From positions 46,072,862 to 46,136,861 of the forward strand of contig CM074511.1 in NCBI GenBank assembly GCA_037379345.1: a DNA stretch of 64,000 nucleotides, read 5' to 3'. The notes under the pieces were generated by a model that did no database searches, was not told where the DNA came from, and saw only the letters and a program-made list of their open reading frames with translations. This document shows positions 4,739 to 58,216 of the stretch, piece after piece. The translations under genes were made by a program, and so were the position numbers. Every line of letters starts with the position of its first letter. The first letter of the stretch is position 1. The DNA is from Perna viridis. Its lineage: Eukaryota.

Positions 4739-5077
4739 ATGGCTAGTTTACCACTAGGGTCTGATATCTACAAAACTGTTTTAAGTGGAATTGAAAATAA
4801 ATGTACTGAAACTATCAAATGGAAAAATGATTCAGATGACAGCGATGACTGTTTTCCAGGTGAAATAAGGACTAAAACCATTCAAAGGACAGGAAAAAGA
4901 AACTCGTATAAACTAAATAGAGACAAACGCAATAAAAATAGAGTTCATTGGATTGATGAATGTGAGAATCTACCTCTTGCTTCGGACAAAAGATTCGAGT
5001 CTGACTCTGTTTCGAAAGTCAATTACAAGCCAATTCTGAAATGTCGTGCCAACTGTGTTATCATTATATCTGAATGA
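4739..5077 (+). CDS. 112-aa intronless protein; putative PP1-interacting small protein (RVHW and KPILK motifs), paralog A
   Basis: Clear protein-level homology to 28043-28348 (LPLGS..TVL, V.WIDEC...PLA..KR, KPILK.R.NC). Upstream TATA box; AATAAA at 5396-5401 followed by a GT-rich tract. Confidence 0.85.
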   Translation: MASLPLGSDIYKTVLSGIENKCTETIKWKNDSDDSDDCFPGEIRTKTIQRTGKRNSYKLNRDKRNKNRVHWIDECENLPLASDKRFESDSVSKVNYKPILKCRANCVIIISE

Positions 5078-5395
5078 AAACTGACAAAACGACCTGAAAA
5101 AGGACAACGCGTCGAGTAAGGAAAAATGCCGTTCGAAAGAGGCAAAGCAGTGGAAAAAATAACTGGCCATGAAAAAGAAAAAGTTTTACAATTCATATGT
5201 TGGGGAATGTTATATCAACTGAAATGTAGAGAATGAAAGACAAAAATACGGTATACATGCATAATGTCAGACTACATTACCTGAAAGATTACGAGGTTTA
5301 TAGCTGCAATTTCATTGACTATACATGGTCTCATGATCATATGTGTTCTAATGTGCAATAGTTTACAGATTGTTTTATACTTATTTATTCTATTC

Positions 5396-5401
5396 AATAA
5401 A
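5396..5401 (+). terminator. Polyadenylation signal for the 4739-5077 gene
   Basis: AATAAA with downstream T/GT-rich element (ttgattctgtttgttg). Confidence 0.55.
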
Positions 5402-6084
5402 AAATGATTATTAATCGACTTGATTCTGTTTGTTGAATTGACTTCCTATTTTATTACTGCTCTATTTGACAATTAAATTTGCGATTATTTTGTAATCATT
5501 TGTCTTCCTTTGTCTTTTTTTATTCTTATTACTTTTGCTTTTTAATTAGGTTTTGTAATATTTAATCATTGAAGTATTTATCACAACTGATAAAACCTGC
5601 TACAGCATTAATTTAATCAGATATACTCTACATTTTGCCGCATAATTCTTTTTCCTTCTTTACGTTCTTTCCCAGTTCACGAAGTTGTAAGATCCGGTTG
5701 CGAGTTTTGCATTTTAGCGTAAAAACTATTTAGAAAAAGTATCCTTCAATTAAGTAAATGGAGTTATGATTATAAAGGCATTCATTTGGATCACTTTGTA
5801 TTGGACATATACACTGTCATGACGAGCAACTGCTAGCTAACAAAGATGAAAACCATTAACGAAAAATGAACACACAAAATACTGCATTCTTCATTCTGTT
5901 GTAACTTGTGGCTTATTTCGTTTCATTTCGTTCTAGCAATGACTGGTTGTTTTGTATTATTGTATCAAAGATCAACGATGGTATTCACCAACCCAGTAAT
6001 TAGACTTGTCTGTCCACGAATCATTTTATATATCATTTACCGAAATTTGCAGTATTACAAATTCTGAAGCTCATAAAACACCGA

Positions 6085-6330
6085 GGCTTCATTGCTTGCA
6101 TTGTACATGGCAGAACCTTTGGATTCTAGATTTGGTTTTCTATTTTGATACCTTTGGATTTGAGAACTTTTTTGTATATAATTTTTGGGGATGTAGATTT
6201 TCCTTTGTATTTGACTGTAATGTTGGTGATGAAAGGTTACTCCTTGAAACACATGAACAGCATATCGAAATTTGTAATATTGTATTACTGGTATTTTTGT
6301 ATTGCCTTGTATTAAAAGGACGTGAAAAGT
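6085..6330 (+). repeat. Hammerhead-bearing dispersed repeat, copy 2 (core degenerate)
   Basis: aatgttggtgatga-aagg-ttact-cctt-gaaacacatgaacagcat at 6219-6263. Perfect stem II, but the core C and the cleavage triplet are mutated. Confidence 0.6.
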
Positions 6331-9300
6331 AACATATCTAGTTTACACAAACTTCATAAAGTCAATGACTGAATCTGGTCTTTCCAGATTTGGTATCACC
6401 TTGAACACATGAGAATCAACACAGGAAAAACCATGATTAGAAAAATGAAACATGAAAATCGTGGAATATATTTAAATAATGAACCTTTCTTCATTTAAGT
6501 ATCAATATTTGTCACATTAAACTCAGATCGTGTCAATAAAAAATTACCATGAATGAAATCCTATTTTAACATCCATTTGCATAATGAGCCATTCACACGA
6601 AGTGATAAATCTTTATTAAATCCCGTAGTAGAGTAAATCAAGCATATGATTTCCGAATATGGTTGTAAATATTACTGAACAGATCAATTTTTCCTTATTT
6701 ACTTATCTTCTTGCATGTCTAGATCTACATAAAAGGCTGTGATCAGCTGCCTTCAAATATGTCTGTCCTTATCTGTGATTCTCATCTCTTTCAACTCTCC
6801 TTTCATCATTCTCATCCAGGTTCCTTTAGGTCTTCCTCTTATCTTTACTGAGGACGCTTAATGAAATATATTTTTTTCTAAATAGTTCACAGTTATTCTG
6901 CTCTTACTGGTCTAAGATATGGCAATTCCAGCACATTTGAGATACGAACCAATTTACCAAAGACACCACAAACTTTTTTGCCACCCGTTTTGCATTTAGA
7001 CGAGGCTCGTAGTACCGTAGTACCGTAAGTGATAGTTTCGTATCTTTGATATAATAAAATAATATTCTATCTGAATTTTAATACTAGTAATCTGTTGTCT
7101 TTTTGGTTATTCGCTGAGGAAAATTATCTCGTTTTTTCAGTCAAAGCTAAAGTAGTTAGCATGCAAAAATATCATGTATATCAAAGCTGGAAAACTATTC
7201 AAATTATAATGCTTTGATGAAAGTAATGTTACTGCTTTCGCCTTTTACTACCTTCTAGTGGCATTAATCTTCATGTTGACGGCTCAATAACGCAATTGAA
7301 TGTCAGTAAAAATATATTTTATTGAGCATCATTTCATGTAATACATTGAAAAGACATCATGATATATATCTAATAGTACATAGTGTTCCAAGGTAAATGT
7401 TCTGATAAAATAAAGTTGAGTTTCCTTTCCAAAACGATCAAAGATGGAGGAAACATAGACATAAGATTAATTTCGGTAAGGGAGTACCTTGTGAAAAGAA
7501 ATTTTTGACATTTTGAAACTCAACTCATATCAATGTATGGCGAACTTCCTTTATTTATTCAGATGGTCTATAGAGTACAAAAATGAGGCAAATTATTATC
7601 TTAACGTGTAAAATTTGTATCTGTATATTTTGTGGACCATCGACCTCTTTTAAATCCTTCTATTACTATCCAACTTTATTAGTTATGACAAGACATTTAA
7701 GGCGTTTGTCCGCTTAGGCTTTAAACCACACGATTAATAACAACTTTTAAAAGAAGTGGGCCGTGTAAGATAAATATTACTTTGTTAAATTGTAATATTA
7801 ATGAACTAATAGTGGCGTTTGCATTTCTTGGTACCATTATCGAATTATGCCTCTTTCAGACATGTATCCTATTCTAATCGAATATTGTTTGGTGGTATCA
7901 ACACATACTTTACTACAATTGATTTTGTACAATATCCTAAGCTGCTTATAGGCAGATATGCAGGATAAAGAACCACTTAAAGCATTTCAGACGCTTGTAC
8001 ATTGATTATACAGACAATTTTGAAGTTCCTGATGATTCGTAGCTCAATTTATAAGTTTTTATAACTTTTCTCAATGTCGAGAACTGGTTAAACAATTTGT
8101 TTGAAACAAATTCAAAATTGATATCGTGTTTTTTATTATAAAAGCAAAATTCTACCTGTCAATTACTTAAAGAAAGGGGAAAATGGAACCCGGATTGAAA
8201 CGGTTATCAAAGGAACACCATCCAGAAATAAAGAAAAGACACTGAAAATACTGATGGAGCAAAGAACATGGAATGACAAAAATAACGCCCACATAGAAAC
8301 AAGTAAATAAGCAACTCGGAATCCACTTAAAACAAAATGTATGGATGTAATTCTGTTATAAATCGGTATCTAGAACAGATAAAGATTTATTGTAAAGTTT
8401 GGCTTGCAATTGTTTCAAGATCTAAGAATCTTATATACTCAAGGATGAGTTTAAGGTTTACTTCAGGATACTATTTTGTATTTTTTTTCTTCATTTTTTC
8501 CAACACAAATAGGAAAGGATGAAGATTAATGAGAGGCTAAAGATTAGAAGATTCCGAGCTTTTAAAGAATATTTAATTGTTACAATCCTTTTTAAATAAT
8601 ATTTAAATTCACGATGGAAATTTTATCTTTTGTAGTTTGTTAGATGCTTTTAGACTGATTAGATTACATTACATTAAAGAGCATACTATAGAGGTATGCT
8701 GTTGCCTGTTTAAGTCAATGAAAGAACATAGTTATTTTGTAGATAATAAGCTTCTAAACAGCATTGAAATAATATCAAACGGCAAAAAGTATTATTCTGC
8801 AAAACAAAAGATGTTCTTTTATTGTTTTATTCATTGTCGGTAAACGAAATTATGTGTGAATATTTAAAGCAATACATTGTACTTTATTTAAACTAGAGCC
8901 TGACAGCTAGCAATTCAAAACATATCCAATGACTTTCCATTTAAACACATTCGTCAGGAAATTTGCGCACGTATATCTCATCAGCAAATGTAAAATTAGC
9001 AGTCCTTGAGTGAATTCATGAGTTGCATGACAATCAGGGAGTTGAGACACATCACAATAATCATTATTTAGGTAATTCTTGACAATCGCCAATATGGCTA
9101 AGACGAAAATAAATTAGACTTCAAATTCGCTATTAACAAAGTGCAACTTTTTGCATTAAAGTTGTACATTTCTGTTTATTTGCATGAACATTTTTGCCTG
9201 TTAGGTTTGATCTCAGTGTGTGTGTGTTTGTTTTGTTTGTTTTGATTTGTTGTATTTGGTTTATGCAAAGAAAAAGGCAGAAAAAAACACTTTTATTATT

Positions 9301-9671
9301 TTTACCCAAAACACCTTTCTCGTTCCTCTAGGAACATCATTAGACTGCAAATGTGATGCATGAAAATTTACTGAACTAAATCTTTGAAGAAACGTAGTTT
9401 TGAACTTTAATTTGTACAAATATACTCATGTCATTTTTATTATTTTTAATATCAAGAATTTCCAATAAGCATGTCAAGGATATAGAGAGTCAATTATTGA
9501 ACCCACAAATGCATGTAGTCATAAATACAAAATGTTTCATTTGATTGTACCCTAACATAATGAACGTGACTAAATACACTAACTACTTTCCTTTAATGCA
9601 AGGACTTAAAATCTTATGGTTAATAATTTCTCGAATTTCATAAACTTATTGACATTTAAATGTCACCGATC

Positions 9672-9674
<3 letters not shown>

Positions 9675-9705
<31 letters not shown>
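9675..9705. repeat. (TC)n microsatellite
   Basis: Direct inspection. Confidence 0.95.
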
Positions 9706-9708
<3 letters not shown>

Positions 9709-11469
9709 AGAAATAAAACAAATACTATCAATATCAAAATAATTAGAGAAATAAACCGTTAAATATTAATTTTCAATACCATTGTTTGACTAACTTGTTT
9801 ATGAGCTTACCTTCATTTCTACACGTAAACAGTTCAAAGCCAACACAGTCTATACTGAAAGGGAAATCATGTGTGTGAACAAGGAAAAGAAAATAATATA
9901 AAATAATATAAGAATAACCAGTAGACATAGATACGAAAAAAAAACAAGCACAAAAAAGAACATTACATGACCAAAATAACAAGTGTAAATTTAATAAAAG
10001 TAAAAAGTAAAAAAGCCAAAATATCATAAACTTTGTGCATAATGTTGCACCAAATACTAAAAGTGATCATAGGTGAGACTCGATACAATCTGTGAGTAGT
10101 ACAAATGTGGAAACAAAAATAATTGGACGAGGAACTGGCCACATTACACAAACAATAAGAAACCGCATGCTGAAATGAACACCATGAGCTCATTTAAAAA
10201 TCAATGGAGATACAGAAATGTAAGCAGTTTCTGCGCTTGTCATATATTCATTGCAGATGATTTTCAATAACAATCGATCAACCAATATACACAAAAAACT
10301 GCCAATCTATAGACTAATTTTAAGATGGTAACAGTTACTGAAAAAATGTATTATCTTTAATGCGATGTTATGCTTAAATTTTAACTTCCTTCATATGTGT
10401 AAATAAATTTTTGTAACAGAAAAACAATGACAATATCTTGCCGGGGTACATAGTGAATTTGAGATTATACAATCTTCTTATTCAATTCTTAAAACATTAC
10501 TACAAATTGAAAAAAAAGTAAAAAAAAAAAAAACAGACAAGCATATTAAATTAACATTGATTTTGAATCGTTCATGCTAACATCCGATCACTAAAGTAAC
10601 ATATAAGCGTTTCGTATGAAACGAAATTAATCATACGTTATCTCTGAGTACATCTTGGTAATGTTGACGCTTTCATATGTTTAAACAGAGTAGTGTTTTG
10701 TGTAATTTGTTTTGTTTTCTGTTTGGGTTTGGTTAACCTTGTTGCTTGTTTATCTTATGTAAAATGTCTTTATTTCTCTGTTATATTTTTTTTAGTAAAC
10801 TCGAGATAACAAATGTTTTGTTAAGTAAAAAAGTACGGCTATTTCAAGCTTTTAGTGTAAATATTATTCGACCAGACCAAAAACCATAAAAGAGCGTTCT
10901 ATAGGTGCCAATGTTTACGTTAAATTACACCTGTAAAAACCGGGGGTGTCACAAAGCAACACCGGCGTTGAAGTCGTAAATATTGATAAAACTGTTTTGT
11001 TTAAATCAAAACTTCCTTTTCCGTGGATTGAGTATTTACTAAAAGAAAGAATATACAGAACAAAAAAATATGTCGTAAACACCAGTGACATGCAATTCAA
11101 GAGCAAATAGTTACAGACAAAAACAACATAAACTGTATTAAGATCAAAATCTTGTATCAAAAGGTTATATAATTTAAACAAACAACGCTGAACAAAATTA
11201 TTCCATAGCAGGAAACCTATATCTTACAAATTTATTCAACTCAATAAACCATTCATTGTTCACTCGTAAGAATGGTGACTAATCTTAAATCTTGTTAATG
11301 ATTAGAAATCATGAGGACACTGCCAAGCAGTACATTTTTGTTTTAAATTGAACTGTAAATTACTTTAATAAATACACGTATTACAGTTTCGAGATAAACA
11401 GTTGATGTTGGATAACTGCTGTCATCATAAATTGAAACTGTATGATGAATTTTTTTAAACACCAAGTTA

Positions 11470-13480
11470 TTTTAGCATAGCCAATGGCCGCAGTTCAAGA
11501 TTATGCATACGCGTAGAAAAATAAAGAAGGAACATGAACTAGAACTTGCAGTATCAGGTTGGGTAAAAAGTATTTTAGCCATTGGAACAATGTCGCATTC
11601 GCAACCACAAACACTGCATAATCGACCTTCAGTATTCAAATACGAAAAAGCTGGAAAAAATTTTCTTCTCCTTTCATGAGGAATATGTTGTTGTCCCAGG
11701 CCTGCGGACAAAACCTGTAACAACATTGGTATTTTATTTTTATTTATTTAAGCGCATACATGCTGAGTAAAGGAACTAGGAATCAAAGAAAATCCAGATA
11801 ATCCTACACACAAACGCAGTACATTCGACAATGATGAAATCCTAGCTAACCACAAACCTTTATGACCTCGTTGAATATTCCTTCAAAAAGCCTAAAGACT
11901 TACTTTATTTCTATTGGATTCTAAGAACTACATCAAAATACATTCATAAAAGGTCAATAAGAATATTGTACTTGTTCAACAAAGACTGCTCAAGATTGTG
12001 TCCGCAGTGGAGGAGGGACATCAAAAATATTGTGAAACTGTTTACTCTCGTTGTAGCACTAACGATTCTCAAAAACTCTACAAAGGTTCCTTAATAATCT
12101 TTAATTTCACTCCTTCGTTGAATTTAATTCAGTTATAACTAAATTAATCTTTTCAACGTAAAATAAATTACCCACGATAAACTGAAAATCCCTCTAAAGG
12201 AAATCAACCACGCATTGAACTTCAAGAATGGCAATATTTTACAAATTTGTTGGTGTTTTTAAAACCTGCGATTCTACAAATGTTATCACTGCAAAGCCAA
12301 ATAACAAAAACTGCTGTATAGAGCAACAGTTGATCAGTATGCTAGAGTTTCTCCTTTACAACATATTTATCGCTTTTGAAAGGACAAATTTTCAACAAAT
12401 TATCGGCACTGATTGAGCTCCTTTTCCAGCCGATATGTTTCTTAATTGAACGCATGTACAGCATATTTTCAATATTTAAATATTAGAATGTTTGCATTCA
12501 TATGAATGGAAGTCTCTTCAAAATGTTGTTAAATACAAGATGGTCAAAGAAGATACTCTATTTTCACATATCGATTTATCGACGATGCTCTATTTATTAA
12601 TAATCCTAACTTTGGAGAATGACTTCTGTTTATTTATCCGTCAGAACTTGAAATATAAGGGACTACTTGAACAGCTCCCTCTCCGTCAATTTAAGACATT
12701 CAACTTAAATTCGACGATAATAATAGTCTCTGTACAAAGGTATATGACAAACGAAATGATTTTGTTTTACAATTATAAATTTACCTTCCATGTGCAGTAA
12801 TATACCAGTTTCCCTTGCACAGTGTGTTTTTTTTTTTTTTTTGAGCTTTAGGTTTTTTTGTGTAACGCTTTTTTTTAATTATCTTCAGTTTTAATATGTA
12901 ATCTATTTTATTTTGTTCGCTACGTTTTGAATGCAGATTCTGTGTTCACCGTTATGCCATGCTTTTTTTTAGGTATTTGAAAGAGTAATCATGGAAACCA
13001 AGGTTATAGCGGTAATCAAAAGAATGTAATCCAGGGACTAAGACCAGACATGGAAAAGAGACATACACAGCAAAGAACATAGATTAACTAAAATCATACA
13101 TACAAAATAACAAAAGCAGATGTGCAACTCGGACTCCTCTAAAAACTGGGAGCATGGACCAGGTGCGCCGGTAGGGTAAGCGTCCTTTGCAAATCTAGAG
13201 ACAACTGCCGAGTTGCTCATAAAAACTCCGGGTAGACGAAAGAGGAAAGGAATTATACAACTGCTGACGCTTCGGTCTTTATTTTCTGCCGATATTTGTT
13301 AAGGTATTCCAGAGCTAATAGCCACTATTCTGACTACTTAATACGCCACGTTGTCTGGGACTTTTGGACAAGGTTTTAAAAAATACAAACCATACGCTTC
13401 ATAAAAAAATTATTTCCGATATCCAGATGTTATAAATAGATAATCTCTACCTGACATAAATACTATGGATTTTTATAGTA
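11470..13480 (+). pseudogene. Old, fragmented Penelope-like (Naiad-type) reverse transcriptase remnant, interrupted by younger inserts
   Basis: Peptide relics across frames: FHEEYVVVP(ADK), MLEFLLYNIF...FQQIIG, RFIDDALFINNPNF, TKVYDKRNDF, LLRYSRA...YSDY...QGF. Many frameshifts and stops. Confidence 0.7.
12979..13252 (-). mobile_element. Young 5'-truncated copy of the Naiad-type family A 3' end
   Basis: Near-identical reverse complement of about 30400-30674. Confidence 0.85.
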
Positions 13481-14165
13481 TCAACAATATATCTTATGTA
13501 CGTTTTACTTGTATTTTCAAATAAACATCATTTTTGCTTAAGGTTTTTGTAATGAGATTAAGTTTCAACATGTTAACTCAATGAACGTCACTAATTCACA
13601 CAGTAACCATCTTAAACATATATATGTACTCTATTTTGATTGAGCATAATTTGGTTTTCTAATGGAAATAATCGAAAAAATGTAAGGTGTATATACGTTC
13701 ATTGTCAAGTTAAATTCTACTAAATTTAGATTTTAGGAAAATGTTATATAGCATAAGTGAATAACAAAATTCCTGAAAAATTTACTCTAAGCAAACCCGT
13801 ATTTAAAATGGCAATATCAAGGTAAAAACGGAAATTTGAAACCCCCGCAGTGGTCGGTCCTTGCTTGGTTAGAGCATTTCCGATAGAAATAGCAGGTTTT
13901 ATAGTGCAATAAACCTTCAGCTTCGATTACAGTTATTTATTTCCTGTATATCACATTATAAACAGTACAAAATATAAAAATAATAAATGTGAAAATCAAT
14001 TGGCTTTGAGTCGGTTAAATTGCGAAAATAACGAAAGCCCTATTAGCATTGGAAAATATTCAGCTTTTTTAAAAAGGGTTATTATTTCACTATGTCTTAT
14101 AGAATGAATTCGTATTTATGTGAACGTCCTAAGTTTACTTTGTGACAAGTTAACGAATAGTTCAG

Positions 14166-17101
14166 TTAATCGAGGCCCTCTAGCCTTTGAGCAGCAGTAC
14201 TGCAAACGGGAATGGTGTTTTTGGCTTCTATAAAACACTCTCTAGCCCGCCCAACGTTTCCATAAAGCTGATAACATACTCCGAGTAAAGTCAAAGAATG
14301 GGAAAGAGACCTTTTTCGAGGGTTTTCATTTGAGACAATAATGTTCAGTGTTGCTAATACTGCAGTTTGATTTTGAGTATCGCCAAGATGGAAGTAACTC
14401 AGAAAACGAAGGCAGTTCAAATAAATAAGTGGTGGTAGCATAAGAAGTGGTCTTATGTTAGCTTCGAGTCTGAATTCATATGGAATAAGTTCCGATTTAT
14501 CATTGAATAATGCATGCCCAACTTCAGTGAGTTTACGTTTTTGAATCAAGGTTAAGTTATGACCACATACTTTGTCTCGAAACATGTTTCTTTCTCCTTC
14601 TGTATAAGACGGGTTCCGTGCACTCAGCATATTTGGTTTTATTACAGATAGTAAATATTCTGTTACTACAAGAACATCTTTGAATTTTTTATGTTTGTAT
14701 AGGTGTGAAGCTAAAAAAAGCCAGCCTGATACGCAATCGGTTTTCGTTCCGTATTGTAACAAAGTCGTGTCTTCTCGGAACTTTCTATATTTGATTATAT
14801 TTCCGACAATTTCACTATCAAGAGTATTAGAGAGTTGCGGCACCTGCTTACAAAAGGCAGCAGCAAAGAAAGTCATCAGATCATGAATATACCCTTGTTT
14901 TTCTTTTTGTATTTTGTTAGTGAGAGATATCAGTGCCTTGTAAGCACATTTTTTATCGTCAAATGGGTAGGAATGCATACATCGAAGAACCAACAAATCT
15001 AAGTCTGCTTCCTGTTGAACATTCGAGTACGGAGTAACTCTCTCCAAACTAGCACTGTGTGAAAACACGTTAATTCCTTCTTTCATGACATTGTTTAGCG
15101 CCCATATTAAAGGCATGTTGTTATCATGTTTAATTTTACCCGAGAACATGTTATTTTGCGGAATAAAGTAATTTGGACATTTACATTCTCGAACCCAACG
15201 TATGATTCGATGCAGACATAATTGGAAACATAAATACAAGTTATTATAGTTCCAAATGTGGTCATCAAACTCTTCTGAAGTCCAGAATAAAGCTGTTTTT
15301 AAAAAATATGAACACAACATATTTTTCAAATGTTCTTGTTTTTCTATTATCTCCTTTAAAGTCAGCTTTAAAAGGCCGTAACACAAAATTTGTGTATGGT
15401 TCAACGTATACATCAATCGCTTTTCGGCAAGAGAAAAGGAAATTCTCCAAAGCCTTAGATTATCGTCATTTATTCTTGGGCCTATTGGTACAAGTAGACA
15501 ACCATCATTAACTACTTCAGAAATAATTTTTTCAGACGGCCAGTTTGAAACTCTTTTTCTGGTTATCCATTCGTTGGCTAAATCTGGCCAATGTTGGCAG
15601 AAAAGGCAAATGGCAAAATCGTACGATTGATATCCGACACAAGGTCCGTGGGCATCCCAACCTGGAATTTCAAATTGCTGCCTGAATTTAGAACTTGAAA
15701 CAGTGCCAGTGCCGTTTTCTAACGAATTCTTTATGTAATCGCTCATTTGCAAAGTTTCTCGGGAAAGTTTAAGTTCTACAAAACCAGGGTTTGTACTTTG
15801 TGCCACAAAGACCAAGTCAGTGAAGTCATCTCTTATAGGCTCTGGCTTAACTAGAACTCTTATAAATTTTAAAACAATCATCTCATCTTCGTCACTACCT
15901 GGAAGAGAAACACCTTCGGTTAGACTTCCAGTAAACATGGAAATGGAATCAATGTCTCCAAAACGGTTAGCGAAATTCTGTACCATGAAAATTTTCTGTC
16001 TCAGCTTAATTTCTTTAAATGTACCAATGACGATAACCGCATTCAAAAGGAATCGTCTGTAAATTTGGCTTCTACGAATATCTGAAAAAAAATATATGTA
16101 TTCATTACTAAATGCCTCTGATGATTAATTAAAGGCTTTTGACCTTTGAAGTGGAAGATTCTCTTAGAGGGACATATGAAGTAGACAGATTTTGAAAACT
16201 ACAAAATACATGAATTAAGCATAATTGACTGTCTGTATGTAAAAATAAGCCGATACTAATAATTTTCGTTAAAGATTGTGCGTTTTTTTTTCCCATGATT
16301 TATGTTGTTTGTGTCACAAATCAGCGATGTGACTGTAGGAATACAAAAATACCAATCATATACATGTTGTGCTTGTCGGTATGCTTTACACATATTTTAA
16401 GGAGCTACCTTTTATCAGAACCACATGCTTAGTTAAACTGTTGCCATACAAATGAAAGCAACAAATAGCAAACACTATTTCGGCTATTGCAAGAACTTTA
16501 ATTATTACCTGTGCATTTAAAGCTTTGATCAATCTTTTGTACTGGAATGATAATATTCTGTATTGCAATGTAGTTTTCATGTCTTCTCTTCAAACATGCC
16601 TTAAATTCATGTTCGAATTGAAAAATTGATCCTCCAAACAAGTCGTTGGTTATAACTGGTTTACCAAGCTTAGTAAACTTGACACAAGGAGAACTTCTGG
16701 TTCGACTGCCCTTGTAAGGAAATTTTTTATAGCATATTTGTTTGTTGTTGGTCTGAATCCACCCTCTTTTCAATTTATTTATCAGATTATCTAAGTCCAT
16801 ACTGCTCTGAAACAGTATAAAAACGTTGTAGATAAACAACAACACAAAACTACAACAATGTCATCAACTTCTATCAATTAAACGTACGTATTATTATTAT
16901 TGCATACTAATTAAAACGGGGAAGTTAAATGGCTCATACAAACACTAAATATGGCTTTGAAATCAAATGACGTCATATAACTTAGATATTATTCTTCCAT
17001 GGTACATAAAATGAATGACATGAGAATCCGACTTGGGAAGTACTAATGAGAGTTGCGAATTGTAAAATGTTAACATAAAGATACTTACAGTCTTCAACCA
17101 T
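14166..17101 (-). CDS. Mab-21/cGAS-like nucleotidyltransferase (cGLR-type) with C-terminal helical TPR-like region; 642 aa; exons complement(17089..17101, 14166..16081)
   Basis: NTase motif GSLTEG-x5-SDEDEM, third acidic residue in YDFA, and Mab-21 motifs WPxxAxEW, WRISFSLAEK, SYFLKTALFW, CPNYFIPQNNMF. Polypyrimidine+CAG acceptor at 16082-16084. An upstream AAAATGGTTGAAGACT|gtaagt micro-exon joins in phase 1 (MVEDY-IRRSQIY). Confidence 0.9.
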
Positions 17102-18839
17102 TTTCGGATTTTCCAATGTAAAAGATTGATCGATTACAACAAATCTATATTTAACGATTGATATATAATACGCTTGAATAATTCTTAGAGGTTTTAAGTA
17201 ATTTTATGCATAAAGCTGGCAATATGTATACAAAAACCATCACTTACGCTTTACCGTTTATGTACTGGATACATATTTTACCTTTGGTTTGAAATTAAAC
17301 AAATAAAACTGCGGCAACCAGTTTAAAAAATCAAATTTTATTTGTTTTTTTATAAAATAAAATGCCGACATAAGACTAGTGCAAATAAATCCAAAACAGA
17401 CTTTTTACAGAGTGGATGAATGGTTGTAATATATATACTCATGTATATTGCATTAATTTGACAAAATTCAAGTGGTCATAATTCAAATTTTCGAATATTA
17501 TGTCATATACCATGACCCTTGATTTTGAATCTAAATTAAATGGCTGTATGGTCAATGATGGTTACTGAAGAATTCCATTCATAAAATCATGTTCATTGTG
17601 TCAACTATGAACGCAGACACGTAAAACTATGTAAATTTATCTAAACACTCTGTTATACAATAAGTAACATATGCCGCGTCGAAAGAGAGTCACGCAATGT
17701 TTACTGTTTAACGACTTGGTGAGTTTTTACATCCTAAAATCCATCTAAACACTAAATTGATTTAGTAACTACAATTTTATAGTTGATCGTAAATTTCTGT
17801 AACATTTTAGATATTATTACTCTAGTCATACCCCGATTTGTTAATTTTCATTACATATTTTTCCTTTTAATTTATTTATTTATTTATTGTTATTTATTTA
17901 TTTATTTTAAAAGATCTAAATTGTACAAAAAATCTACATAAGTAGTATTGAAATGGAATGCCAAATGCAGCACCAAGACGTTTTGCCCGGTGCAATACAT
18001 AAAAAGACGCCTGGGTGTTTTATCAATTTTAAATTTGTAATGCAGCAAATTTCGATAAAAAGTATATGAAATGATACGTGGTCAGATAAGTATAATTACT
18101 GGGTTGATTCATACCTCCCCCCCCCTTCAAAAAAAAAACTCCGTTTTTAATTCTTCCAAAATTTTGACTTAAAGAGTATGAAATATAGAGGTTTTAAAAA
18201 ATCATATATAAGATGTGTATGTCTTCTATACACTTTTGTGAATTAACACTCAAAACATTGGTCATTGGTATCAAATTCTTTGCTTTAATGCTAAAAAAAT
18301 ATGACGACTGTACCTATGAACAATTTATAATGCATAGCTAAATATCAATTATATTTTTCTTATCTAACAGCATATATTCCCTGATAAATTAAATAAAACA
18401 AGAACCGAAGGTATAGAAGAGAAAAAAAGCCATGGCGAATACAATAGCCGAAAAAAAAACAAAAAGCAAAGGTTTCGGGTGTGAAGATGAATGAGCAGTT
18501 TCTGTTACTTGCAAGACACCAGTCGTGCTGATCCTTAAAAGTTTGATAAAAAGGACAGACATTTCTCACTTCAACTTTTGTATCTTGCAGTTTGGAAAAT
18601 GTTTATATGTATATCTACTATTAGTATTTACGATTTTCAGGTTCCTAGAATCATGGTATTAAAAAGAGTAATCAAGATTCTAGATTCTAACAACATAATT
18701 GTAAAAATTCAAGGAATCACTTTTTAAATAATAAAATATGATGATCATTGAATCAAAATGATAATCTTCCCTAGTAAGAGAAGAATGAACTTAAATGTTT
18801 CTTAAAAGATATGAATTAAATTTAATCATGTAAAGGGGG

Positions 18840-19110
18840 CCCTTTTAATAAAAAAGAAGAGACCACAAGTTCAGGGATAACGGCCAGACAAGGAAAAACA
18901 CACACAACAAAGATCATAAATATACGAAATAACACACGAGTAGAAACAAAAATAAATGTTCAACTCAGACTCCATGAAAAACTGGGCGTATGAATTAGGT
19001 GCACCGGTAGAGTATTTCTAGAACAACAACCGAGTAAACTGTCATATCTGGGATACAAAAAAAGGGAAACTATGACATGGCGAACAAATCGGTTTTTATG
19101 GTGCAGATGC
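18840..19110 (-). mobile_element. Diverged Naiad-type family A 3' end fragment
   Basis: Reverse complement resembles 30360-30630 (ggtgcaccggtag, caactcagactcca). Confidence 0.55.
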
Positions 19111-19199
19111 ATACCGAAGAGTCAGCAGTGGGGTGATTCAAATACGTCAAAATCCAAAATCGTGCCCGAAACGTGAAGACATGAAACAAAGGCGATCTA

Positions 19200-19500
19200 C
19201 AAACACAATGTAGCAAACCGAATAAAAGAGGTTACACATAAAAACTGAAGATAAAGGAAAAAAGATGTCACACAAAAAATAAAGCATTGGCAATATAAAC
19301 TCCCACAAAAAAAGCGGGGGTGATATCAGATGCTCCGGAAGTGTGTGCAGGTCCTGTTCCGCCTGCGGCACCCACCATATTGCAAGTGAGTATAATCCGG
19401 TAATTATCTAGCAACAATAATGAAACTGCCCGACACGTGTCAAACACTATTGACATTAGGGCAAAATCAGTCATTTAGGTAAGTATTATGTTGTAAACAT
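19200..19500 (-). mobile_element. Naiad-type family B 3' end fragment
   Basis: Similar to 2370-2630 in reverse orientation. Confidence 0.55.
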
Positions 19501-21502
19501 AGTAGATAATTTGGAAATAGAAGATGATTCAGAAGAGCTTTTTACAAAGTATGAAGAATCCATGTAAGTACTACATATTTGTATAAAGGTGTTCCATTTT
19601 TCTGAAGAGTTACAAAGATGTATATTGCTCCTTAGTCAGGATTTCAGTTAAGCATGGGGAAAGTAGAAGTAACAGTCGAAAAATCGTAAGTCTAGATGTT
19701 AATATTTTTGATAATGATCTATCAATCAGATAATGTTTAGGATCCTCATTGATAGATAACACCATGAATGTAACAACTGGTAAGATGGTAAGACTGTTGA
19801 CCTCTTTTACAGAAGTACGCATAAGAGTTTTTTTTTCTCTCTTTTATTTCATGTATCTAGTATTATTATCAATATTTATCGACACTTGGCAATATAGATA
19901 ATTTGGTCAATCTAATGTCCAGAAAACAATATTTATTGACGATTGGTAATTAAAATTTAGAAATAATGTTTCTGAAATTATAAGTACTGTACTTACTTTA
20001 CAGAGTAACTTTCACTATGTTTTTATATTGATGTGTTTGTGTAATTTGTATCATATGTGTTGATTGTTGATTAAAAAATGTCCTCTTATGATCAAGTAAA
20101 ATATTACTAAGATAAGCTGAAATTTAAAAAACAGCTCCATGTGTTGCTTAAATGCAATTGCAGTTGTCTATCTTTAGTCACATATAATATTTCAGAGCTA
20201 TACGAATGCCTGATGGTGTGGTAAATTGAGATTTACGAAAAAGCATGTGTATTGCTGTAGCTAGATATTGATAGATATATAGGCACAGAAAATACGGCGA
20301 GGGAGGCCCAGGGGGGCAAAGCCTTCCGGAACCTCACCGGTTTTAGGGAAAATCAATCACATTTTCTTGATGAAGAAATATATGTTTTATTTGAGTCGTA
20401 CACCTAAATGACTGACGCATTTCTCCATATATACATGTTTGTGTTGGTTAAGTTTTACGTGAAGGTTACAAAATACTATAATATAAGTGTGCATATGTTG
20501 CGTTATTCCAATTCCATTTTGTTTTCAAATATGTAGTCCTTATCTACAATTCAATATGGAAGAATGGTCATGAAATTTAATGTGTTTTGTAATTATTTTA
20601 CTTTTTTCCTTCTGAATATTATCTTCTTTATGTAAAGTCCAGACGTCGATTTTTATTGGCAGGCATTTTAGTTCATCATTGGTAAATTCCAATGTTTAAA
20701 TTACGGGGACGAAATTTCAATGCGACTGTCGTATAAATTACGGGGACAATTTTGTGTTCGAAGGACCAACAGGAAACTGATATCTACATAGAACATTTGC
20801 CGAAATAGGCGGGACCCTAAGTTGGGGTGTAACCCCCCCCCCTCGACTACCGATTAGCTTCAAGTAGCGAGTACTGCGTCATGTTAGCCTTGAGTACCTA
20901 ATCAATTTTTTTTCTAGTACAGAGTCCATGTACCTAATTTTTTGAGTTTACTCTAAAAATCGGGCTAAGTCTTGAGTTCGATTAATTTAAAAGAAGACTT
21001 TTTTCATTGCCCCTGTTTCGTTAATCGAATAGATACTTGTAAATTGAAAAATTGAGTATTGAAAAAAAAAGTTGGTTGCTATGTATTTTTGTGCAAAGAA
21101 TCAATTTAAATGTATTTAAAAATATAATTCATGTCAATTTGAGGCAGTTTCGAACAGAAATATTTAGACAGGCTTACTTTTATAAAGAATTCCACTTAAG
21201 TGCACGATAGGGGCTTCTTGATCTTGTTCGAGGGTATATGAACTGAATGTTCATTATTGAAGACGCTCGTATAATATCACGATGCAGAACAGGAATAAAA
21301 TCCTGTTCATTGAGTGACAATATGCTGTTTTTAATAAATCATGTGAAGTGTTGTCATACGCACATTCCCTACATATCCTCTCTTTTTATATTACTATATA
21401 CATGTATATTTTAATAATATTAACATAATTTCATTCATTTTTCTATTTACAAAGTTAATTTCAGTTTTTTTGTATCCAATTATTTCGTCATAAATTATTT
21501 AT

Positions 21503-21669
21503 GAGGGGTTGGACATGGGAACAGGAACCCGGGAATTAGGGGAGGTAGGAATGAAAGTTAGGGGTGTAAGCTTGTCGGGTTACTACAATTGGGAGTAAAG
21601 GAGAGAAAACCTGTGAGGGAGGTCTGGAACCCGATAGCAAAATTGAGCAGGAACCCCCTGTCTACCCCT
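21503..21669. mobile_element. Small MITE-like element with imperfect terminal inverted repeats
   Basis: gaggggttggacatgg ... cctgtctacccctc. Confidence 0.4.
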
Positions 21670-27863: not shown

Positions 27864-27940
27864 CACGTGGGTTAAAAGGTCCTTTGTAGTAAAAAATGTA
27901 TAAAAAGCGAATTTAAACGCTCTGAAATATTATTTCACTA
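27864..27940 (+). promoter_or_regulatory. E-box (CACGTG, 27864-27869) and TATA box (TATAAAAAG, 27899-27907) of paralog B
   Basis: Motifs seen directly; ATG in AAAATGA context at 28043. Confidence 0.5.
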
Positions 27941-28042
27941 TAGAATATACAATCAACATCTCTCGTGAATCCTCAGGGTTCTTTTTTCAAATTTATTATT
28001 TCTGACTCGTTCAAGCCAAAGGCGCGGTATCACTTAAGGAAA

Positions 28043-28348
28043 ATGACAAGTTTGCCTCTTGGTTCGGTAATATTTCGAACTGTTCTAGCTGAAATAGACA
28101 AAAAGTACTTCAAAAATATGGAAGTTATTGAAGAAGAAATGAATGTAGAAAAGACAAGGTGCATCACAGACATTAAGAAGAGGAAGCATCATAAAAACTC
28201 GAAATATCGACAGCAATCTAAGGTTCAGTGGATTGATGAGTGTGGTGAATCCCCACTGGCTGTAGAAAAAAGACACTGCTTCCGAACTGAATCGAAGCAA
28301 CATTTAAAACCTATTCTCAAATATAGAACGAACTGTCTCTTATCCTGA
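28043..28348 (+). CDS. 101-aa intronless protein; putative PP1-interacting small protein (KVQW and KPILK motifs), paralog B
   Basis: The ATG at 28043 (not the GTG at 27965) aligns with the start of paralog A. Conserved motif blocks despite a divergent middle region; TATA box upstream. Confidence 0.85.
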   Translation: MTSLPLGSVIFRTVLAEIDKKYFKNMEVIEEEMNVEKTRCITDIKKRKHHKNSKYRQQSKVQWIDECGESPLAVEKRHCFRTESKQHLKPILKYRTNCLLS

Positions 28349-38307: not shown

Positions 38308-38320
38308 TTTTTTTCTTTGC

Positions 38321-54286: not shown

Positions 54287-55220
54287 TTACGAAAGCCCAA
54301 TGAGCTCATTTCGAAGAATTAAAAAAAATCACGTTATAACGCGAAACTTTCGCGTAATAAATGTCTATCATTTAGTTGAAATATACGATATAGTGCGTTT
54401 CCTCGCTGTTATGGTGGTTATGAATAAACTTCTCAGGGGTGGATCCAGGATTTTAGATTAGGGCGCGCACAGTTAAAAAATTTTTAGCTTAAATTTTTGA
54501 AATATTTTTTTCTAGATTGGGTGCAGTGTAAATAGCTTTTGTGGCGAGAAATTATAGTTTCAACCTAAAACCGCCTAAATCTACCCATGACAATCCATGC
54601 TTTGTAAATTTTAAGGGGCATATGCCGACCACGCCCCAGCCTGAATCCGCCCCTGCTTCTCATTGAAAGTAAAAGCATTTTATTTCGATGACCTTGCGAC
54701 CGCTATTTTCTTAAATCTAGTGGGCAGCGAGATCATTTGCATGCCTCTGCAAAATTTAAATATTTTGTTACTAGCGCATATCGGCTTGCGTAAGAAATAC
54801 ATACTTAATATTTTTTAATAATTTCTATTGTTGATGTTGATCTATTTATTTTGTTTGCATATTTTTTTCTTTTTTGGGGGAAAAAGGTAGCTTCCCACTG
54901 ATTTTGCATTTGTAATTAAAGTGAAAGTGTTTTAATCCTAAAATGTATGTCTGTAATCACGTAGATAAAAACATAACTACTGCTTTATATTAAGAACAAA
55001 ACGGTTTTAAATCTCTGCATTTCGACCTCCAACACAAAATGCAGAGGAAAAAGTACTGGATACTCAAAGTGTAAAAATACTGGCAGACACATCATACAAG
55101 TTTCGCGCTATTACGCGTAGTGATCGCCTTATTTCACAACAGTTTCGCGTTATCTCGCGACAGTTAGGTGTTGTAACGCGATTTCTTTTGTCTGCAAAAT
55201 GAGCTCAAAGGGTTTCGTAG
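54287..55220. mobile_element. Old TIR element of about 0.9 kb with long imperfect inverted repeats
   Basis: tacgaaagcccaatgagctcattt...aaatcacgttataac versus the reverse complement of gttgtaacgcgattt...aaatgagctcaaagggtttcgta. Confidence 0.55.
54434..54655 (+). mobile_element. MITE with CAGGGG termini and 5-bp TSD
   Basis: TIR caggggtggatccagg/cctgaatccgcccctg; TSD cttct on both sides. Confidence 0.8.
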
Positions 55221-57634
55221 TAAGTAATAGGGTATGTAAGTCTCGTCACGTGACTCCGTGGTTTCGTAAGAATGGGTCCTAGTCTACCATTCAAATGCAC
55301 GGAGATTCGTCATTAACATAGCATTGAGTTCAATATTAAAAGCGAAGTATCATTTTTTGGGTAAAAATACTGATTGAAAATGACAATTATCAAGTTCTAA
55401 GAGATAAAAATGTTTAGAATAGCATAAAATAAAAGATTTTGCATTGTGAAGCAGCGTTTCAATTTCCCGGAAGTACACACTAAAATGCATATCGGTCTTC
55501 GGATTTCAATACGTTCTACACCAGAAATTCCGGAAGGGAAACTGAAACTTACAAACCCTAGTGTAGGTAAGTAAGTGAATTTTAATTTAAAGAGGGAACT
55601 CAAGAAGTCAGAACCGGCTTAATTTTCACCGATGCCGTGAAAAAGGATGCGGTACGTTTTCTTTTATGTTTCGTTTAGATAGTTAATCAAGATGGCTTTG
55701 TTGAAGTATTTGATCAAACTGTACCTCCAAACAAACAATCGCCTATTTAATGGCATTATGGCGCAATAAATTAATCTGTTAAGCGTCATCTTCTTATAAT
55801 AAAATGTAGAACAATATGATGACGATATCGTTGTCTTACGTGTGACCGACATTTTTACCATTCAAGTGTTTGTTGATCTGTCACGTCAAAATATTGCTTT
55901 TATTTAGTGCACTTTAAAAGGTCATGACACTCTGTTTGCTTCTCTTTGACATGTGATATGCATTACGAAAAGTGCCATTCCGGTGTTAATATATTTCTGT
56001 CATATTATGATACAGTCGTCGTCGTCGTCGTCGTTAATTCAGGCTGCTGAAACACTTCGCTTTCTCATGCTTTTTTTAACTTTTTTATCAGTATTTAATA
56101 TCGTCAATGTTCCAAGTTGTTAATCAGAGCTGCTTAACTACCGTAACGTTTCATTTTTTGTTTGTTTGTTCGTGTGTTAGTATTTGTTGGTTTTCTAGTT
56201 TTGTTTGTTTGTTTTTTTTATATCACAGAAAGCTACTTGCTATAGGCGACTTAATCATTTTACAAGCTTAGTCACTTTTAAAACGTTATTCTCTCTGCAT
56301 TTTCTGGTCGAAATAATTAAACACTATCAACTTGAATACTGATTTTCGGTGTTTTGTTTCATCCGAAGGGCAACTATTTTGAGGCCAACTGGCAGTCACT
56401 TCTACTTTAAAAATTTTATGTAAATAAAAATTAAGGAAACAGTATGTTTAAAAAAGTTTCAAATGGAAGCATTTGATTTCGGGTACAATAGCCACATTCA
56501 TTTTTTATGTCTGATTTTTGTGACACTGATTTATGGTCAAATTTTATCTCATACGCAACATAATTTAAGAGTCAATTTCCCCATTATAGAACGGAGATAA
56601 TTATACATGGTGATTTCAATTTCGATTTGTAATATTATTAGTTTCAAAAGTTAAAAATGATTACCAGCAGACAGAATATTCCCCTTATTTGTATAGTTAT
56701 TAATACAAAGACGTCTCATTGTCAATGGTAAGGATATTTACACAAAGTGTTCCCTTTCGAGGATCAATTCGTTCTGTTTAAAATCTTGACAAAGCATCAA
56801 ACTGTCGGGAATTATAATTTGCTTATCTTTAGGTCATCATGTCAAAATAAAATCGCCTACAGTGAATTGCCTGTGCTACATGTTTCTATTCATATTATTC
56901 AATCAATTACATTTTGTGAAATTTAAAAGTCGTAAATATTTAATTTTATTGAAATTAACCTTCATAAAACCTATGGTTACGAGTTTGACAAGGAAGGTAT
57001 GTCCTTGTTAGTCCATATATTTTTCATATCCTTGTGTATTTCTATCATGAACTTATACGATCTGCCTACCAACTCATTAACCAAACAACAAAGAAACCCA
57101 GTGGAACCGTTCGATAACAATAATTTTGGGTTAAAAGTTGTGAAGTTTATTTGCGCAAGGTACTTCACTTACTTTGTTTAAGATAGAACATAGTTAAAAT
57201 GCTTTTCACAACTGATTGAAGGATGTTTATTACACCCAGGTAAAATTCAGAAGAACGTAAATACACAAAATTTTATGTTACCTTTAATATTGGACCAAGC
57301 AGTCTTGATTTCAGTCAATTTCTCGGTCGATAACAATAAAGACATCAATCTAACGGATAAAAGAGATTGGGTCTGTTGTGACTTTAGTGATAATTTGTCA
57401 GAGTACAAATGACTTGTGAAATCCGCAGCATCCGGGAAACTTCTACAAAACCTGCACTAAGAAGCAATTGATTTCCAGTAAGAGGATTATATTGGTAGCA
57501 CTTTTCTAGTGCAGACTTGTGAGACAAATATTTACAGATATTTTCTACATGATCTGTGATGTCTTTTGTCACGCCTGTACCCTGGAGCGAAATTGATTGT
57601 GAAAGTTTACTTACTTGTTTGTAGTTTATTACGA

Positions 57635-57665
57635 TATATAGTTTGGGAACAGTCAGCTGCTCAGT
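57635..57665 (+). promoter_or_regulatory. TATA-like (TATATA 57635-57640) plus Inr (TCAGT 57661-57665) of the gene at 57728
   Basis: 28-nt TATA-to-Inr spacing. Confidence 0.5.
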
Positions 57666-57727
57666 GGATGAACTTATTATAGAGTGATCGGTGTGAGTTT
57701 ATCATTAGTGTCTGGAAATCATTGACA

Positions 57728-58216
57728 ATGAGAACGGAAAATGTTAAATCGCGCAGGACGCTAAAATCTAAAACACAAAGTATAGAGAGCAGTGTTATGA
57801 AGTTGACTCGGAGTAAAACACTGACGATCCCAGAGGCAAACAACACATCAATTGCTTCGTCTATGGACAATGAAAGATCTCACACACCTTTATCACGAAC
57901 TACCAGTTTACCGTCCTCGTTCAGTAATATAGAAAGAAACCCGTTACCAATAGGTTCTGACGCCTTCCAGGCTGTGTTGAGAGAATTTGTTGATGAAACA
58001 ACAGACTTTCCTGAACCGAAACAAAAAGAAACAAAGGAATATCAACATGAGGAACAACAATATCAACCCCCAAAAAAGACATCAAGTCTCAGACGAACTC
58101 AGTCTGAACGAATTCCAGGACGATCTGTGAGGTTTGGCGGGTTGGAGATAGAAGGAATTCCATCATCGTCTCATGGGCTGGCAATAAGACTATCTTCCAC
58201 CGATTTTAAAATTTGA
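57728..58216 (+). CDS. 162-aa intronless, Ser/Thr-rich, probably disordered protein; putative PP1-interacting protein (RSVRF), divergent family member C
   Basis: First ATG at 57728. Shares LPIGSDAFQAVLREF with the N-terminal motif of A and B; SSLR...RSVRF; TATA/Inr upstream; AATAAA at 58627-58632. Confidence 0.8.
   Translation: MRTENVKSRRTLKSKTQSIESSVMKLTRSKTLTIPEANNTSIASSMDNERSHTPLSRTTSLPSSFSNIERNPLPIGSDAFQAVLREFVDETTDFPEPKQKETKEYQHEEQQYQPPKKTSSLRRTQSERIPGRSVRFGGLEIEGIPSSSHGLAIRLSSTDFKI

What the first reader, a model, noticed from the sequence alone, without database searches (positions are those of the whole stretch)
4739..58216. Dispersed cluster of three small intronless genes encoding an unrecognised family of putative PP1 adaptor proteins
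Seen: three co-oriented single-exon ORFs (4739-5077, 28043-28348, 57728-58216). A and B conserve three separate blocks around a divergent basic linker: M[AT]SLPLGSxI[YF][KR]TVL, [RK]V[HQ]WIDECxxxPLAxxKR and KPILKxRxNC. C shares block 1 and has SSLR-x9-RSVRF. Established: [RK]-x(0,1)-V-x-[FW] preceded by basic residues is the PP1 RVxF docking motif. The following D-x-x-G-x-x-L pattern recalls PPP1R3/GM-type extensions, and [GS]ILK is a secondary PP1 site. Inference: an old tandem-derived family of roughly 100-160-aa disordered PP1-targeting or inhibitory subunits. KPILK lies C-terminal to RVxW, the reverse of the usual SILK order. Such genes are easily missed by annotation, and I recognise no named family.
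Basis: partly seen in the sequence, partly recalled or inferred. Interest (0 to 1): 0.85.

Follow-up and report, generated by a model that had tools for sequence, protein, structure and literature searches.

The report
Bivalve small proteins with PP1-docking motifs
Three small single-exon genes in this mussel window belong to an unnamed, bivalve-wide family of disordered proteins whose few invariant residues match the anchor residues of two known docking motifs for protein phosphatase 1, so they are probably new regulators of that enzyme; binding has not been tested.

Summary
All three ORFs are real. A (4739-5077) and B (28043-28348) are clear paralogues (38% identity, E 7e-21). C (57728-58216) shares only the N-terminal helix motif with them (hhalign 89.7% over 31 columns).

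Gene A is transcribed. In RNA-like runs of four studies a contig at 189-661x covers only about 4542/4690-5488, unspliced. It lies behind a conserved TATA box and ends after AATAAA/ATTAAA signals.

dN/dS is 0.10-0.19. The genomic cluster is larger than reported: an intact copy and a broken copy lie upstream, a C-like ORF lies downstream, and one member lies 4.6 Mb away.

Profile searches found about 70 small "hypothetical" proteins. All named ones are bivalve (Mytilus, Dreissena, Mactra, Potamilus, Sinanodonta), often in tandem. None matches any Pfam family, PP1 regulators included, and there is no PDB sequence match.

In 51 aligned members the only invariant residues are V-x-W, I-L-K and one Cys in a hydrophobic C-terminal tail. 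The motif flanks are basic on the N side and acidic on the C side. The RVxW-to-[SP]ILK order and roughly 30-residue spacing match yeast Rif1.

The parts
4739..5077 (+). Gene A coding sequence (112 aa)
   Evidence: The translation is intact. It lies within a high-depth unspliced RNA contig in four studies. dN/dS is 0.13-0.16 against A' and P0003.
4659..4667 (+). TATA box of gene A (TATATAAAG)
   Evidence: It is invariant between A, A' and the P0003 locus. Contigs in X2 and X7 start 17-31 nt downstream, at 4683 and 4690.
4683..5491 (+). Transcribed unit of gene A (about 0.8 kb); in two runs the contig extends upstream to 4542
   Evidence: Contig depth is 189-661x here against 0-6x in the flanks, with no splice. 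AATAAA sits at 5397-5402 and ATTAAA at 5472-5477.
4748..4810 (+). Block 1 of A (LPLGSDIYKTVLSGIENKCTE): the only predicted helix
   Evidence: AF2 predicts a helix at residues 9-24, with pLDDT about 77. This motif is shared with C.
4940..4957 (+). RVHWID: RVxF-type motif of A (residues 68-73)
   Evidence: V69 and W71 are invariant, and D73 and E74 at least 90% conserved, in 51 sequences. The polymorphism at 4940 (A>C) seen in all four RNA runs is synonymous, Arg to Arg.
5027..5074 (+). KPILKCRANCVIIISE: SILK-like motif plus Cys-hydrophobic C-terminal tail of A
   Evidence: I99, L100, K101 and C106 are invariant. The motif starts 16 residues from the C-terminus in most members.
28043..28348 (+). 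Gene B coding sequence (101 aa); KVQW at 28220-28231, KPILK at 28307-28321
   Evidence: It is 51% identical to P0022, from another sample. A TATA-like TATAAAAAG lies at 27899-27907. Transcription was not tested.
57728..58216 (+). Gene C coding sequence (162 aa); block 1 at 57944-57979, RSVRF at 58121-58135
   Evidence: Mytilid orthologues are 60-68% identical with long invariant blocks. dN/dS is 0.10 against Mytilus edulis. The M. edulis orthologue is called as a single-exon gene.

Best explanation
A, B and C are real, independently transcribed, single-exon genes. They belong to a tandemly expanded, bivalve-restricted family of small (about 95-180 aa), mostly disordered proteins.

The A/B-type members have four elements:
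- an N-terminal amphipathic helix (GS-[DE]-x-F-x-x-V-[LM]);
- a basic linker (older lineages add CxxC...CxC);
- an RVxF-type motif, [RK]-V-x-W-x-D-E-x4-P-L;
- about 30 residues later, K-[PS]-I-L-K-x-[KR]-x-x-C-(I/V)4-S-[DE] at the very C-terminus.

The most likely mechanism is docking to the catalytic subunit of protein phosphatase 1. The V and W would sit in the RVxF groove and I-L-K in the SILK pocket, in the same order and spacing as in budding-yeast Rif1. The N-terminal helix would then supply a second partner or a location. The invariant Cys in its hydrophobic tail may contribute to inhibition, by analogy with the Cys motif of Inhibitor-3.

C is a divergent cluster member. It keeps the helix and a canonical R-S-V-R-F preceded by an RRxS kinase-type site, but lacks the ILK tail.

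Shown: the genes, their expression (A only), purifying selection, family breadth and motif invariance. Inferred: PP1 binding and its consequence.
For: **Genes**
- ORFs and paralogy.
- Further copies in the genome.

**Transcription of A**
- In four RNA-like runs from four studies, a contig at 189-661x covers only about 4542/4690-5488, collinear with the genome. The flanks are at 0-6x.
- 14 RNA-like runs from six studies hold at least 20% of the 3-kb stretch.
- TATATAAAG and an Inr-like TTTCATAAC are conserved between paralogues.

**Selection**
- dN/dS is 0.10-0.19.

**Breadth**
- 34 representative clusters at E<=1e-3 among 1.84 billion proteins, and 42 in the second search.
- Named members come from Mytilus galloprovincialis, Dreissena, Mactra, Potamilus and Sinanodonta, all labelled 'hypothetical'.
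- Tandem pairs occur in M. galloprovincialis, and adjacent locus tags in the other species.

**Motifs**
- In the 51-sequence alignment the invariant columns are V69, W71, I99, L100, K101 and C106.
- The x position of RVxW takes only H, Q, R, K or T.
- All 70 members with V-x-W-x-[DE]-[EQ] also have [SP]ILK 28-53 residues downstream.
- The N flank carries a net charge of +3.0 and the C flank -1.9. From memory of Hendrickx et al. 2009, real RVxF sites have basic N flanks and acidic C flanks.

**Disorder**
- AF2 gives pTM 0.22 with a single helix at residues 9-24.

**Precedents**
- Yeast Rif1 has KSVAF at 114 and SILR at 146, and both are needed for PP1 function (PMC3937515).
- Inhibitor-3 uses KVEW, basic residues and cysteines that engage the active-site metals (PMC10066265).

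**Weak leads**
- The nearest named clusters in the protein atlas were PP1c_bdg (0.83) for a family member and GLC7-interacting protein 1 (0.75) for the C orthologue. Both scores are within chance range.
Against:
- RVxF-like strings are common. Only 37 of 70 members fit the strict Meiselbach pattern, 10 of 70 fit the Hendrickx five-position pattern, and about 10 lack R/K within two residues before V.
- The SILK-like motif has Pro rather than Gly/Ser in 51 of 70 members. I know of no validated P-I-L-K site.
- The invariant Cys and hydrophobic tail have no established PP1 role.
- Older lineages carry CxxC...CxC, which could point to a small metal-binding module with a different partner.
- Transcription of B and C was not tested here.
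- C's link to A and B rests on a motif of about 30 residues plus position in the cluster.
Confidence: 0.55

Rival explanations
1. The family is real and translated, but its conserved motifs serve a partner other than PP1. One option is a small metal-binding or fold-upon-binding module built from CxxC...CxC, V-x-W and the Cys-containing tail. Another is a nuclear or chromatin role suggested by the basic linker. On this reading the RVxF/SILK resemblance is coincidental.
For: - Pro replaces Gly/Ser before ILK in 51 of 70 members, and about half the members fail the strict RVxF patterns.
- The Cys is invariant and older lineages carry four extra cysteines.
- There is no homology to any PP1-regulator family in Pfam.
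- The atlas leads fall within chance range.
Against: - Five of the six invariant columns are exactly the anchor residues of the two PP1 motifs, while the tolerant x position varies.
- The flank charges fit RVxF sites.
- The spacing of about 30 residues matches Rif1. From memory, Inhibitor-2 has a similar spacing.
- The mytilid members lack CxxC...CxC yet keep both motifs.
Confidence: 0.35
2. C is not a true family member. It would be an unrelated mytilid gene that shares one short helix motif with A and B and happens to lie in the same cluster, so the 'three-gene family' would really be two genes plus a neighbour.
For: - The A-family HMM did not recover C among 1.84 billion proteins at E<=1e-3.
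- Pairwise similarity covers only 12 residues.
- C lacks the ILK tail and has F rather than W.
Against: - hhalign gives 89.7% probability, E 1.9e-6, over 31 columns, and the HMM hits are reciprocal within the window.
- C has the same strand, the same single-exon build and the same cluster.
- A further C-like ORF with the same block lies 12 kb downstream.
- C also has a basic-flanked V-x-F downstream of the helix.
Confidence: 0.3
3. The ORFs are not independent genes. They would be exons of larger genes, untranslated ORFs in non-coding RNAs, or chance frames.
For: - Transcription was examined only for A.
- Bacterial-style ORF listing says nothing about eukaryotic gene models.
- A low-depth spliced antisense transcript starts next to A.
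Against: - The RNA contigs over A are collinear with the genome and bounded by a TATA box and poly(A) signals, with near-zero flanks.
- dN/dS is 0.10-0.19.
- The ORF is intact, with start and stop at the same positions, in about 70 homologues from several bivalve orders.
- Orthologues are annotated as single-exon genes.
Confidence: 0.04

Closest known systems
Inhibitor-3 (PPP1R11 / yeast Ypi1)
   Same: It is a small disordered protein with an RVxF motif that uses Trp (KVEW). Basic residues follow, then a cysteine motif next to hydrophobic residues (CCC-IY) that engages the PP1 active-site metals. It also has a SILK-type contact (PMC10066265).
   Different: - There is no sequence homology: no PF07491 match in any of 51 members.
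- The genome has its own Inhibitor-3 gene on another chromosome.
- In Inhibitor-3 the SILK-like site precedes RVxF and the cysteines lie 17 residues after the Trp. Here ILK follows RVxW by about 30 residues and there is a single Cys 5 residues after ILK.
Budding-yeast Rif1 N-terminal PP1-docking region
   Same: The motif order is RVxF then SILK, with about 30 residues between them (KSVAF at 114, SILR at 146). Both motifs are used to recruit PP1/Glc7 (PMC3937515).
   Different: Rif1 is a very large HEAT-repeat protein and the motifs are a small part of it. There is no homology, and Rif1 has no C-terminal Cys-hydrophobic tail.
Inhibitor-2 (PPP1R2)
   Same: It is a small disordered PP1 regulator. 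From memory, it has K-G-I-L-K-N-K and a Trp-ending RVxF-type motif followed by D-E (KSQKWDE), about 30 residues apart.
   Different: The motif order is opposite. It has no IDoHA helix equivalent in this family, and no member matches any Pfam family at a meaningful level, IPP-2 included.
PPP1R3 / GM glycogen-targeting subunits
   Same: An RVxF motif followed by an acidic residue at +2.
   Different: This family has no CBM21 domain, and the D-x-x-G-x-x-L extension is not conserved in it.

Membership tests
SLiM-type PP1-interacting proteins (RVxF class) | An [RK]-x(0,1)-[VI]-{P}-[FW] motif in a disordered region | tested here: met
   V-x-W is invariant in 51 sequences. R or K stands directly or one residue before V in roughly 60 of 70 members. 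The x position is H, Q, R, K or T only. AF2 shows no fold around the motif.
SLiM-type PP1-interacting proteins (RVxF class) | Stricter consensus patterns (Meiselbach 2006; Hendrickx 2009, both quoted from memory) | tested here: inconclusive
   37 of 70 members match the Meiselbach pattern and 10 of 70 the Hendrickx five-position pattern. All seven C-type sequences (RSVRF) match both.
SLiM-type PP1-interacting proteins (RVxF class) | Basic N-terminal and acidic C-terminal flanks | tested here: met
   Mean net charge is +3.0 over the 10 residues before the motif and -1.9 over the 10 residues after it.
SLiM-type PP1-interacting proteins (RVxF class) | Physical, motif-dependent binding to PP1c | not testable with these tools
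   A natural full-length PP1c ORF was located (L054:65-1048).
SILK motif carriers | [GS]-I-L-[KR] | tested here: inconclusive
   I-L-K is invariant. The preceding residue is Ser in 19 members and Pro in 51 of 70. Inhibitor-3 shows that non-canonical SILK sequences can occupy the pocket.
Inhibitor-3 (PF07491 PPI_Ypi1) | Match to the family profile | tested here: not met
   No match in A, B, C or any of 51 members at E up to 10. A separate gene on G000:C7 matches above the cut-off.
Inhibitor-2 (PF04979), PPP1R3 (CBM21), PP1c_bdg (PF10488), DARPP-32/Inhibitor-1 | Match to the family profile | tested here: not met
   None of these families appears among the Pfam matches of 51 members or of the three window ORFs.

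The most novel reading that the evidence does not exclude
This would be a bivalve-specific class of PP1 inhibitors. They would dock through RVxW followed by [SP]ILK, the Rif1-type order. Their invariant Cys in a hydrophobic C-terminal tail would reach or occlude the catalytic centre, echoing the Cys motif of Inhibitor-3. The N-terminal helix, shared with the C-type genes, would be a new interaction module that sets where or on what the complex acts. The family's tandem expansion would then reflect lineage-specific tuning of PP1 in animals that routinely accumulate phosphatase-inhibiting algal toxins.
Probability: 0.2. Interest if true: 0.7.

Novelty: new variant of a known kind. Interest (0 to 1): 0.45.

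Why it matters
PP1 gets its specificity from hundreds of short-motif partners, and almost all known ones come from yeast and vertebrates. If binding is confirmed, this would add an unannotated, highly expressed family conserved across several bivalve orders, with four notable features:
- two docking motifs in the rarer RVxF-then-SILK order;
- a Pro-containing SILK variant;
- a new invariant Cys-hydrophobic tail;
- a lineage-specific branch of PP1 regulation in an economically important group of animals.

The work also shows that about 70 'hypothetical' small genes in bivalve annotations form one family. The claim is modest until binding is shown.

Tried and rejected
**Complex prediction.** There is no result either way.

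**Finding a PP1c sequence**
- G000's own PP1c genes are split into short exons.
- The long single-ORF Metallophos hits are, from my reading of their translations, Mre11-like, ApaH-like and purple-acid-phosphatase-like, not PP1.
- Giant-virus PPP phosphatases were too distant, at 59% identity or less.

**Known-family searches**
- Pfam on A, B, C, on 10 members and on 51 members gave nothing meaningful.
- The family profile against PDB sequences gave only chance hits at E 0.29 or higher.
- The protein atlas gave leads at chance-level scores only.
- Literature searches by accession or locus tag gave no papers. A search on PP1 plus bivalve terms found nothing on this family.

**Synteny and transcription**
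- Within 10 kb of the M. edulis C orthologue there is no A-type ORF.
- Evidence that C is transcribed is inconclusive. An ENA contig covers 57645-58795 but has low coverage and no clear poly(A) tail.

**The circular contig over gene A**
- There are no AG/GT splice sites at the joint.
- No Rfam ribozyme or other RNA family matches within 4300-5700 at E<=1.
- There are no flanking long repeats.
- The joint is absent from the assembled genome.

**Retroposition as the origin of A/A'.** Rejected, because the homology includes 320 bp of promoter and stops at the stop codon.
Full report
**1. The observation**

The three ORFs are present as described. A is window 4739-5077 (112 aa), B is 28043-28348 (101 aa) and C is 57728-58216 (162 aa), all on the + strand.

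A and B align over their whole length at 38% identity, E 7e-21. C shares only the block LP[LI]GSxxFxxVL with A in a pairwise comparison.

Profile-profile comparison of the A-type family with the C-type family gives 89.7% probability (E 1.9e-6) over 31 columns. Each family's HMM picks out the other's ORF among the 1522 open frames of the window and nothing else.

C does contain SSLR-x9-RSVRF. What is conserved after the Trp is x-D-E-x4-P-L.

**2. More members than three**

The window is G000:C1:46072862-46136861. A six-frame search of the 723-Mb genome found the following:
- An intact fourth copy 9 kb upstream of A (A', C1:46068638-46068973, 66% identical).
- A broken copy on the opposite strand at C1:46057147-46057554 that still reads RVKWIDECEHLPLA.
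- A C-like ORF 12 kb downstream of C that keeps only the helix block.
- A distant member 4.6 Mb away that has RKVKW and KPILKHRTNCVIVV but not the helix block.

A and A' are similar from 320 bp upstream of the ATG to the stop codon and hardly beyond it. They therefore arose by DNA duplication that included the promoter, not by retroposition.

A Mab-21/cGAS-like ORF lies between A and B on the other strand.

**3. Are they genes?**

*Transcription of A.*
- Fourteen runs guessed to be RNA, from six studies, hold 20-47% of a 3-kb stretch around A.
- Contigs of four of these runs, one per study, were laid on window 2300-8200. Each has one contig at 189-661x k-mer depth confined to about 4542/4690-5488. 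The flanks are at 0-6x.
- The contigs are collinear with the genome, so A is unspliced.
- Two contigs start at 4683 and 4690. That is 17-31 nt after TATATAAAG (4659-4667), at a TTTCATAAC element. Both elements are conserved in A' and in a third locus.
- The contigs end at 5403-5488, after AATAAA (5397) and ATTAAA (5472).
- The one difference seen in all four runs (4940 A>C) is synonymous and lies in the Arg codon of RVHW.

*Selection.* Pairwise dN/dS is:

| Pair | dN/dS |
|---|---|
| A vs A' | 0.16 |
| A vs P0003 | 0.13 |
| A vs B | 0.19 (dS saturated) |
| C vs its Mytilus edulis orthologue | 0.10 |

*B and C.*
- C has orthologues at 60-68% identity in several mytilid samples, with long invariant stretches. 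The M. edulis gene is called as a single exon.
- B has a 51%-identical counterpart elsewhere.
- Transcription of B and C could not be examined, because only one read-laying run was available.

**4. The family**

A profile of five members was searched against 1.84 billion representative proteins. It found 34 clusters at E<=1e-3. A wider profile found 42 in the 5.8-billion set.

- All hits are small proteins.
- Every hit that carries a name is a 'hypothetical protein' of a bivalve: Mytilus galloprovincialis, Dreissena polymorpha, Mactra antiquata, Potamilus streckersoni or Sinanodonta woodiana.
- Adjacent locus tags in Mactra, Potamilus and Sinanodonta, and two members 6.3 kb apart in M. galloprovincialis, show that tandem clustering is the rule.
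- Nothing outside bivalves was detected, and no paper mentions these accessions.
- No member matches a Pfam family at a meaningful level, and none of the PP1-regulator families appears.
- The family profile finds nothing in the PDB by sequence.
- The genome has its own Inhibitor-3 gene elsewhere.

**5. Anatomy**

In a 51-sequence alignment only six columns are invariant: V69, W71, I99, L100, K101 and C106, in A numbering. D73, E74 and K97 are at least 90% conserved.

- All 70 sequences with V-x-W-x-[DE]-[EQ] also have [SP]ILK 28-53 residues downstream (median 33.5; 29 in mytilids).
- In most sequences K-[SP]-I-L-K begins exactly 16 residues from the C-terminus. It is followed by x-[KR]-x-x-C-(I/V/L)4-S-[DE].
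- The residue before ILK is Pro in 51 and Ser in 19.
- The ten residues before the V-x-W carry a mean net charge of +3.0, and the ten after it -1.9.
- Non-mytilid members add CxxC...CxC before the motif.
- AlphaFold2 with this alignment gives pTM 0.22. It predicts only one helix, at residues 9-24, which is the block shared with C.

**6. Mechanism**

Five of the six invariant residues are the anchor residues of the two best-known PP1 docking motifs: V and F/W of RVxF, and I, L and K of SILK. The tolerant x position varies among residues that the motif allows. The flanks have the charge pattern I recall for validated RVxF sites (established knowledge, from memory of Hendrickx et al. 2009).

Budding-yeast Rif1 has KSVAF at 114 and SILR at 146, and both motifs serve PP1 recruitment (PMC3937515). 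The spacing is about 30 residues, as here. Mouse Rif1 has the opposite order with about 20 residues between the motifs (PMC5437018).

Inhibitor-3 shows three relevant things (PMC10066265):
- A Trp-type RVxF (KVEW) is functional.
- A non-canonical SILK sequence can occupy the SILK pocket.
- Cysteines flanked by basic and hydrophobic residues can inhibit PP1 by touching the active-site metals.

I therefore think the A/B-type proteins dock on PP1c through RVxW and [SP]ILK. The helix would give a second interaction. The invariant Cys tail is a candidate inhibitory element, but that last step is speculation.

C has a canonical RSVRF ten residues after an RRTQS kinase-type site. It would be a phospho-regulated relative without the ILK tail.

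None of this binding has been tested. I located a natural full-length PP1c ORF on a metatranscriptome contig. It is identical to this genome's PP1c exon over 76 residues.

**7. Against the PP1 reading**

- RVxF-like strings are frequent.
- Only about half of the members meet the strict consensus, and roughly ten lack a nearby R/K.
- Pro before ILK is not a validated SILK variant.
- The extra cysteines of older members could mean a different, metal-dependent function.
- The two atlas leads to PP1-binding clusters score within the chance range.

**8. Verdict**

The genes are real, and the family is unnamed and conserved across several bivalve orders. The PP1-regulator reading is the best available explanation, at about 0.55. 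The kind of system, short-motif PP1 partners, is well known. The family itself, the Pro-ILK variant and the Cys-hydrophobic tail are new.

Noticed in passing
window 4542-5491: In two of four RNA-like runs (X1 and X5, from different studies) the high-depth contig over gene A is circular. It is 977 nt, that is 947 nt plus a 30-nt overlap, and joins 5488-5491 directly to 4542-4545 with 3 nt of microhomology. The joint has no AG/GT, no ribozyme match and no long flanking repeat, and it is absent from the assembled genome. It could be a circular RNA or a 947-bp tandem-duplication allele with read-through.
   Followed up: partly
window 3164-3594 and 4354-4576, minus strand: A low-depth (8.6x) spliced contig in run X2 joins these two blocks across a 759-nt GT..AG intron on the minus strand. 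It starts about 110 nt upstream of gene A's start site, so it looks like a divergent transcript from a shared promoter region.
   Followed up: no
window 14166-16046, minus strand: A 626-aa open frame between A and B carries the Mab-21 nucleotidyltransferase and Mab-21_C domains (cGAS-like receptor type).
   Followed up: no
window 1-64000: An Rfam scan at gathering thresholds found no RNA family anywhere in the window. This includes 1471-1518, where another first-stage note proposed a hammerhead ribozyme.
   Followed up: partly
L016:1351-1665 (G000:C1:41455113-41455427): This distant family member sits 4.6 Mb from the cluster. It lacks the N-terminal helix block and instead starts with C-x-H...MFLYG-x-C-x-x-C-Q-E. 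The same variant occurs in other samples (P0025, P0037, P0081).
   Followed up: partly
window 6043-6272: Short pieces (21-30 nt) of high-depth contigs (185-456x) from all four runs touch this stretch and continue into unlike sequence. This is probably a repeat or an exon edge of an abundant transcript encoded elsewhere.
   Followed up: no
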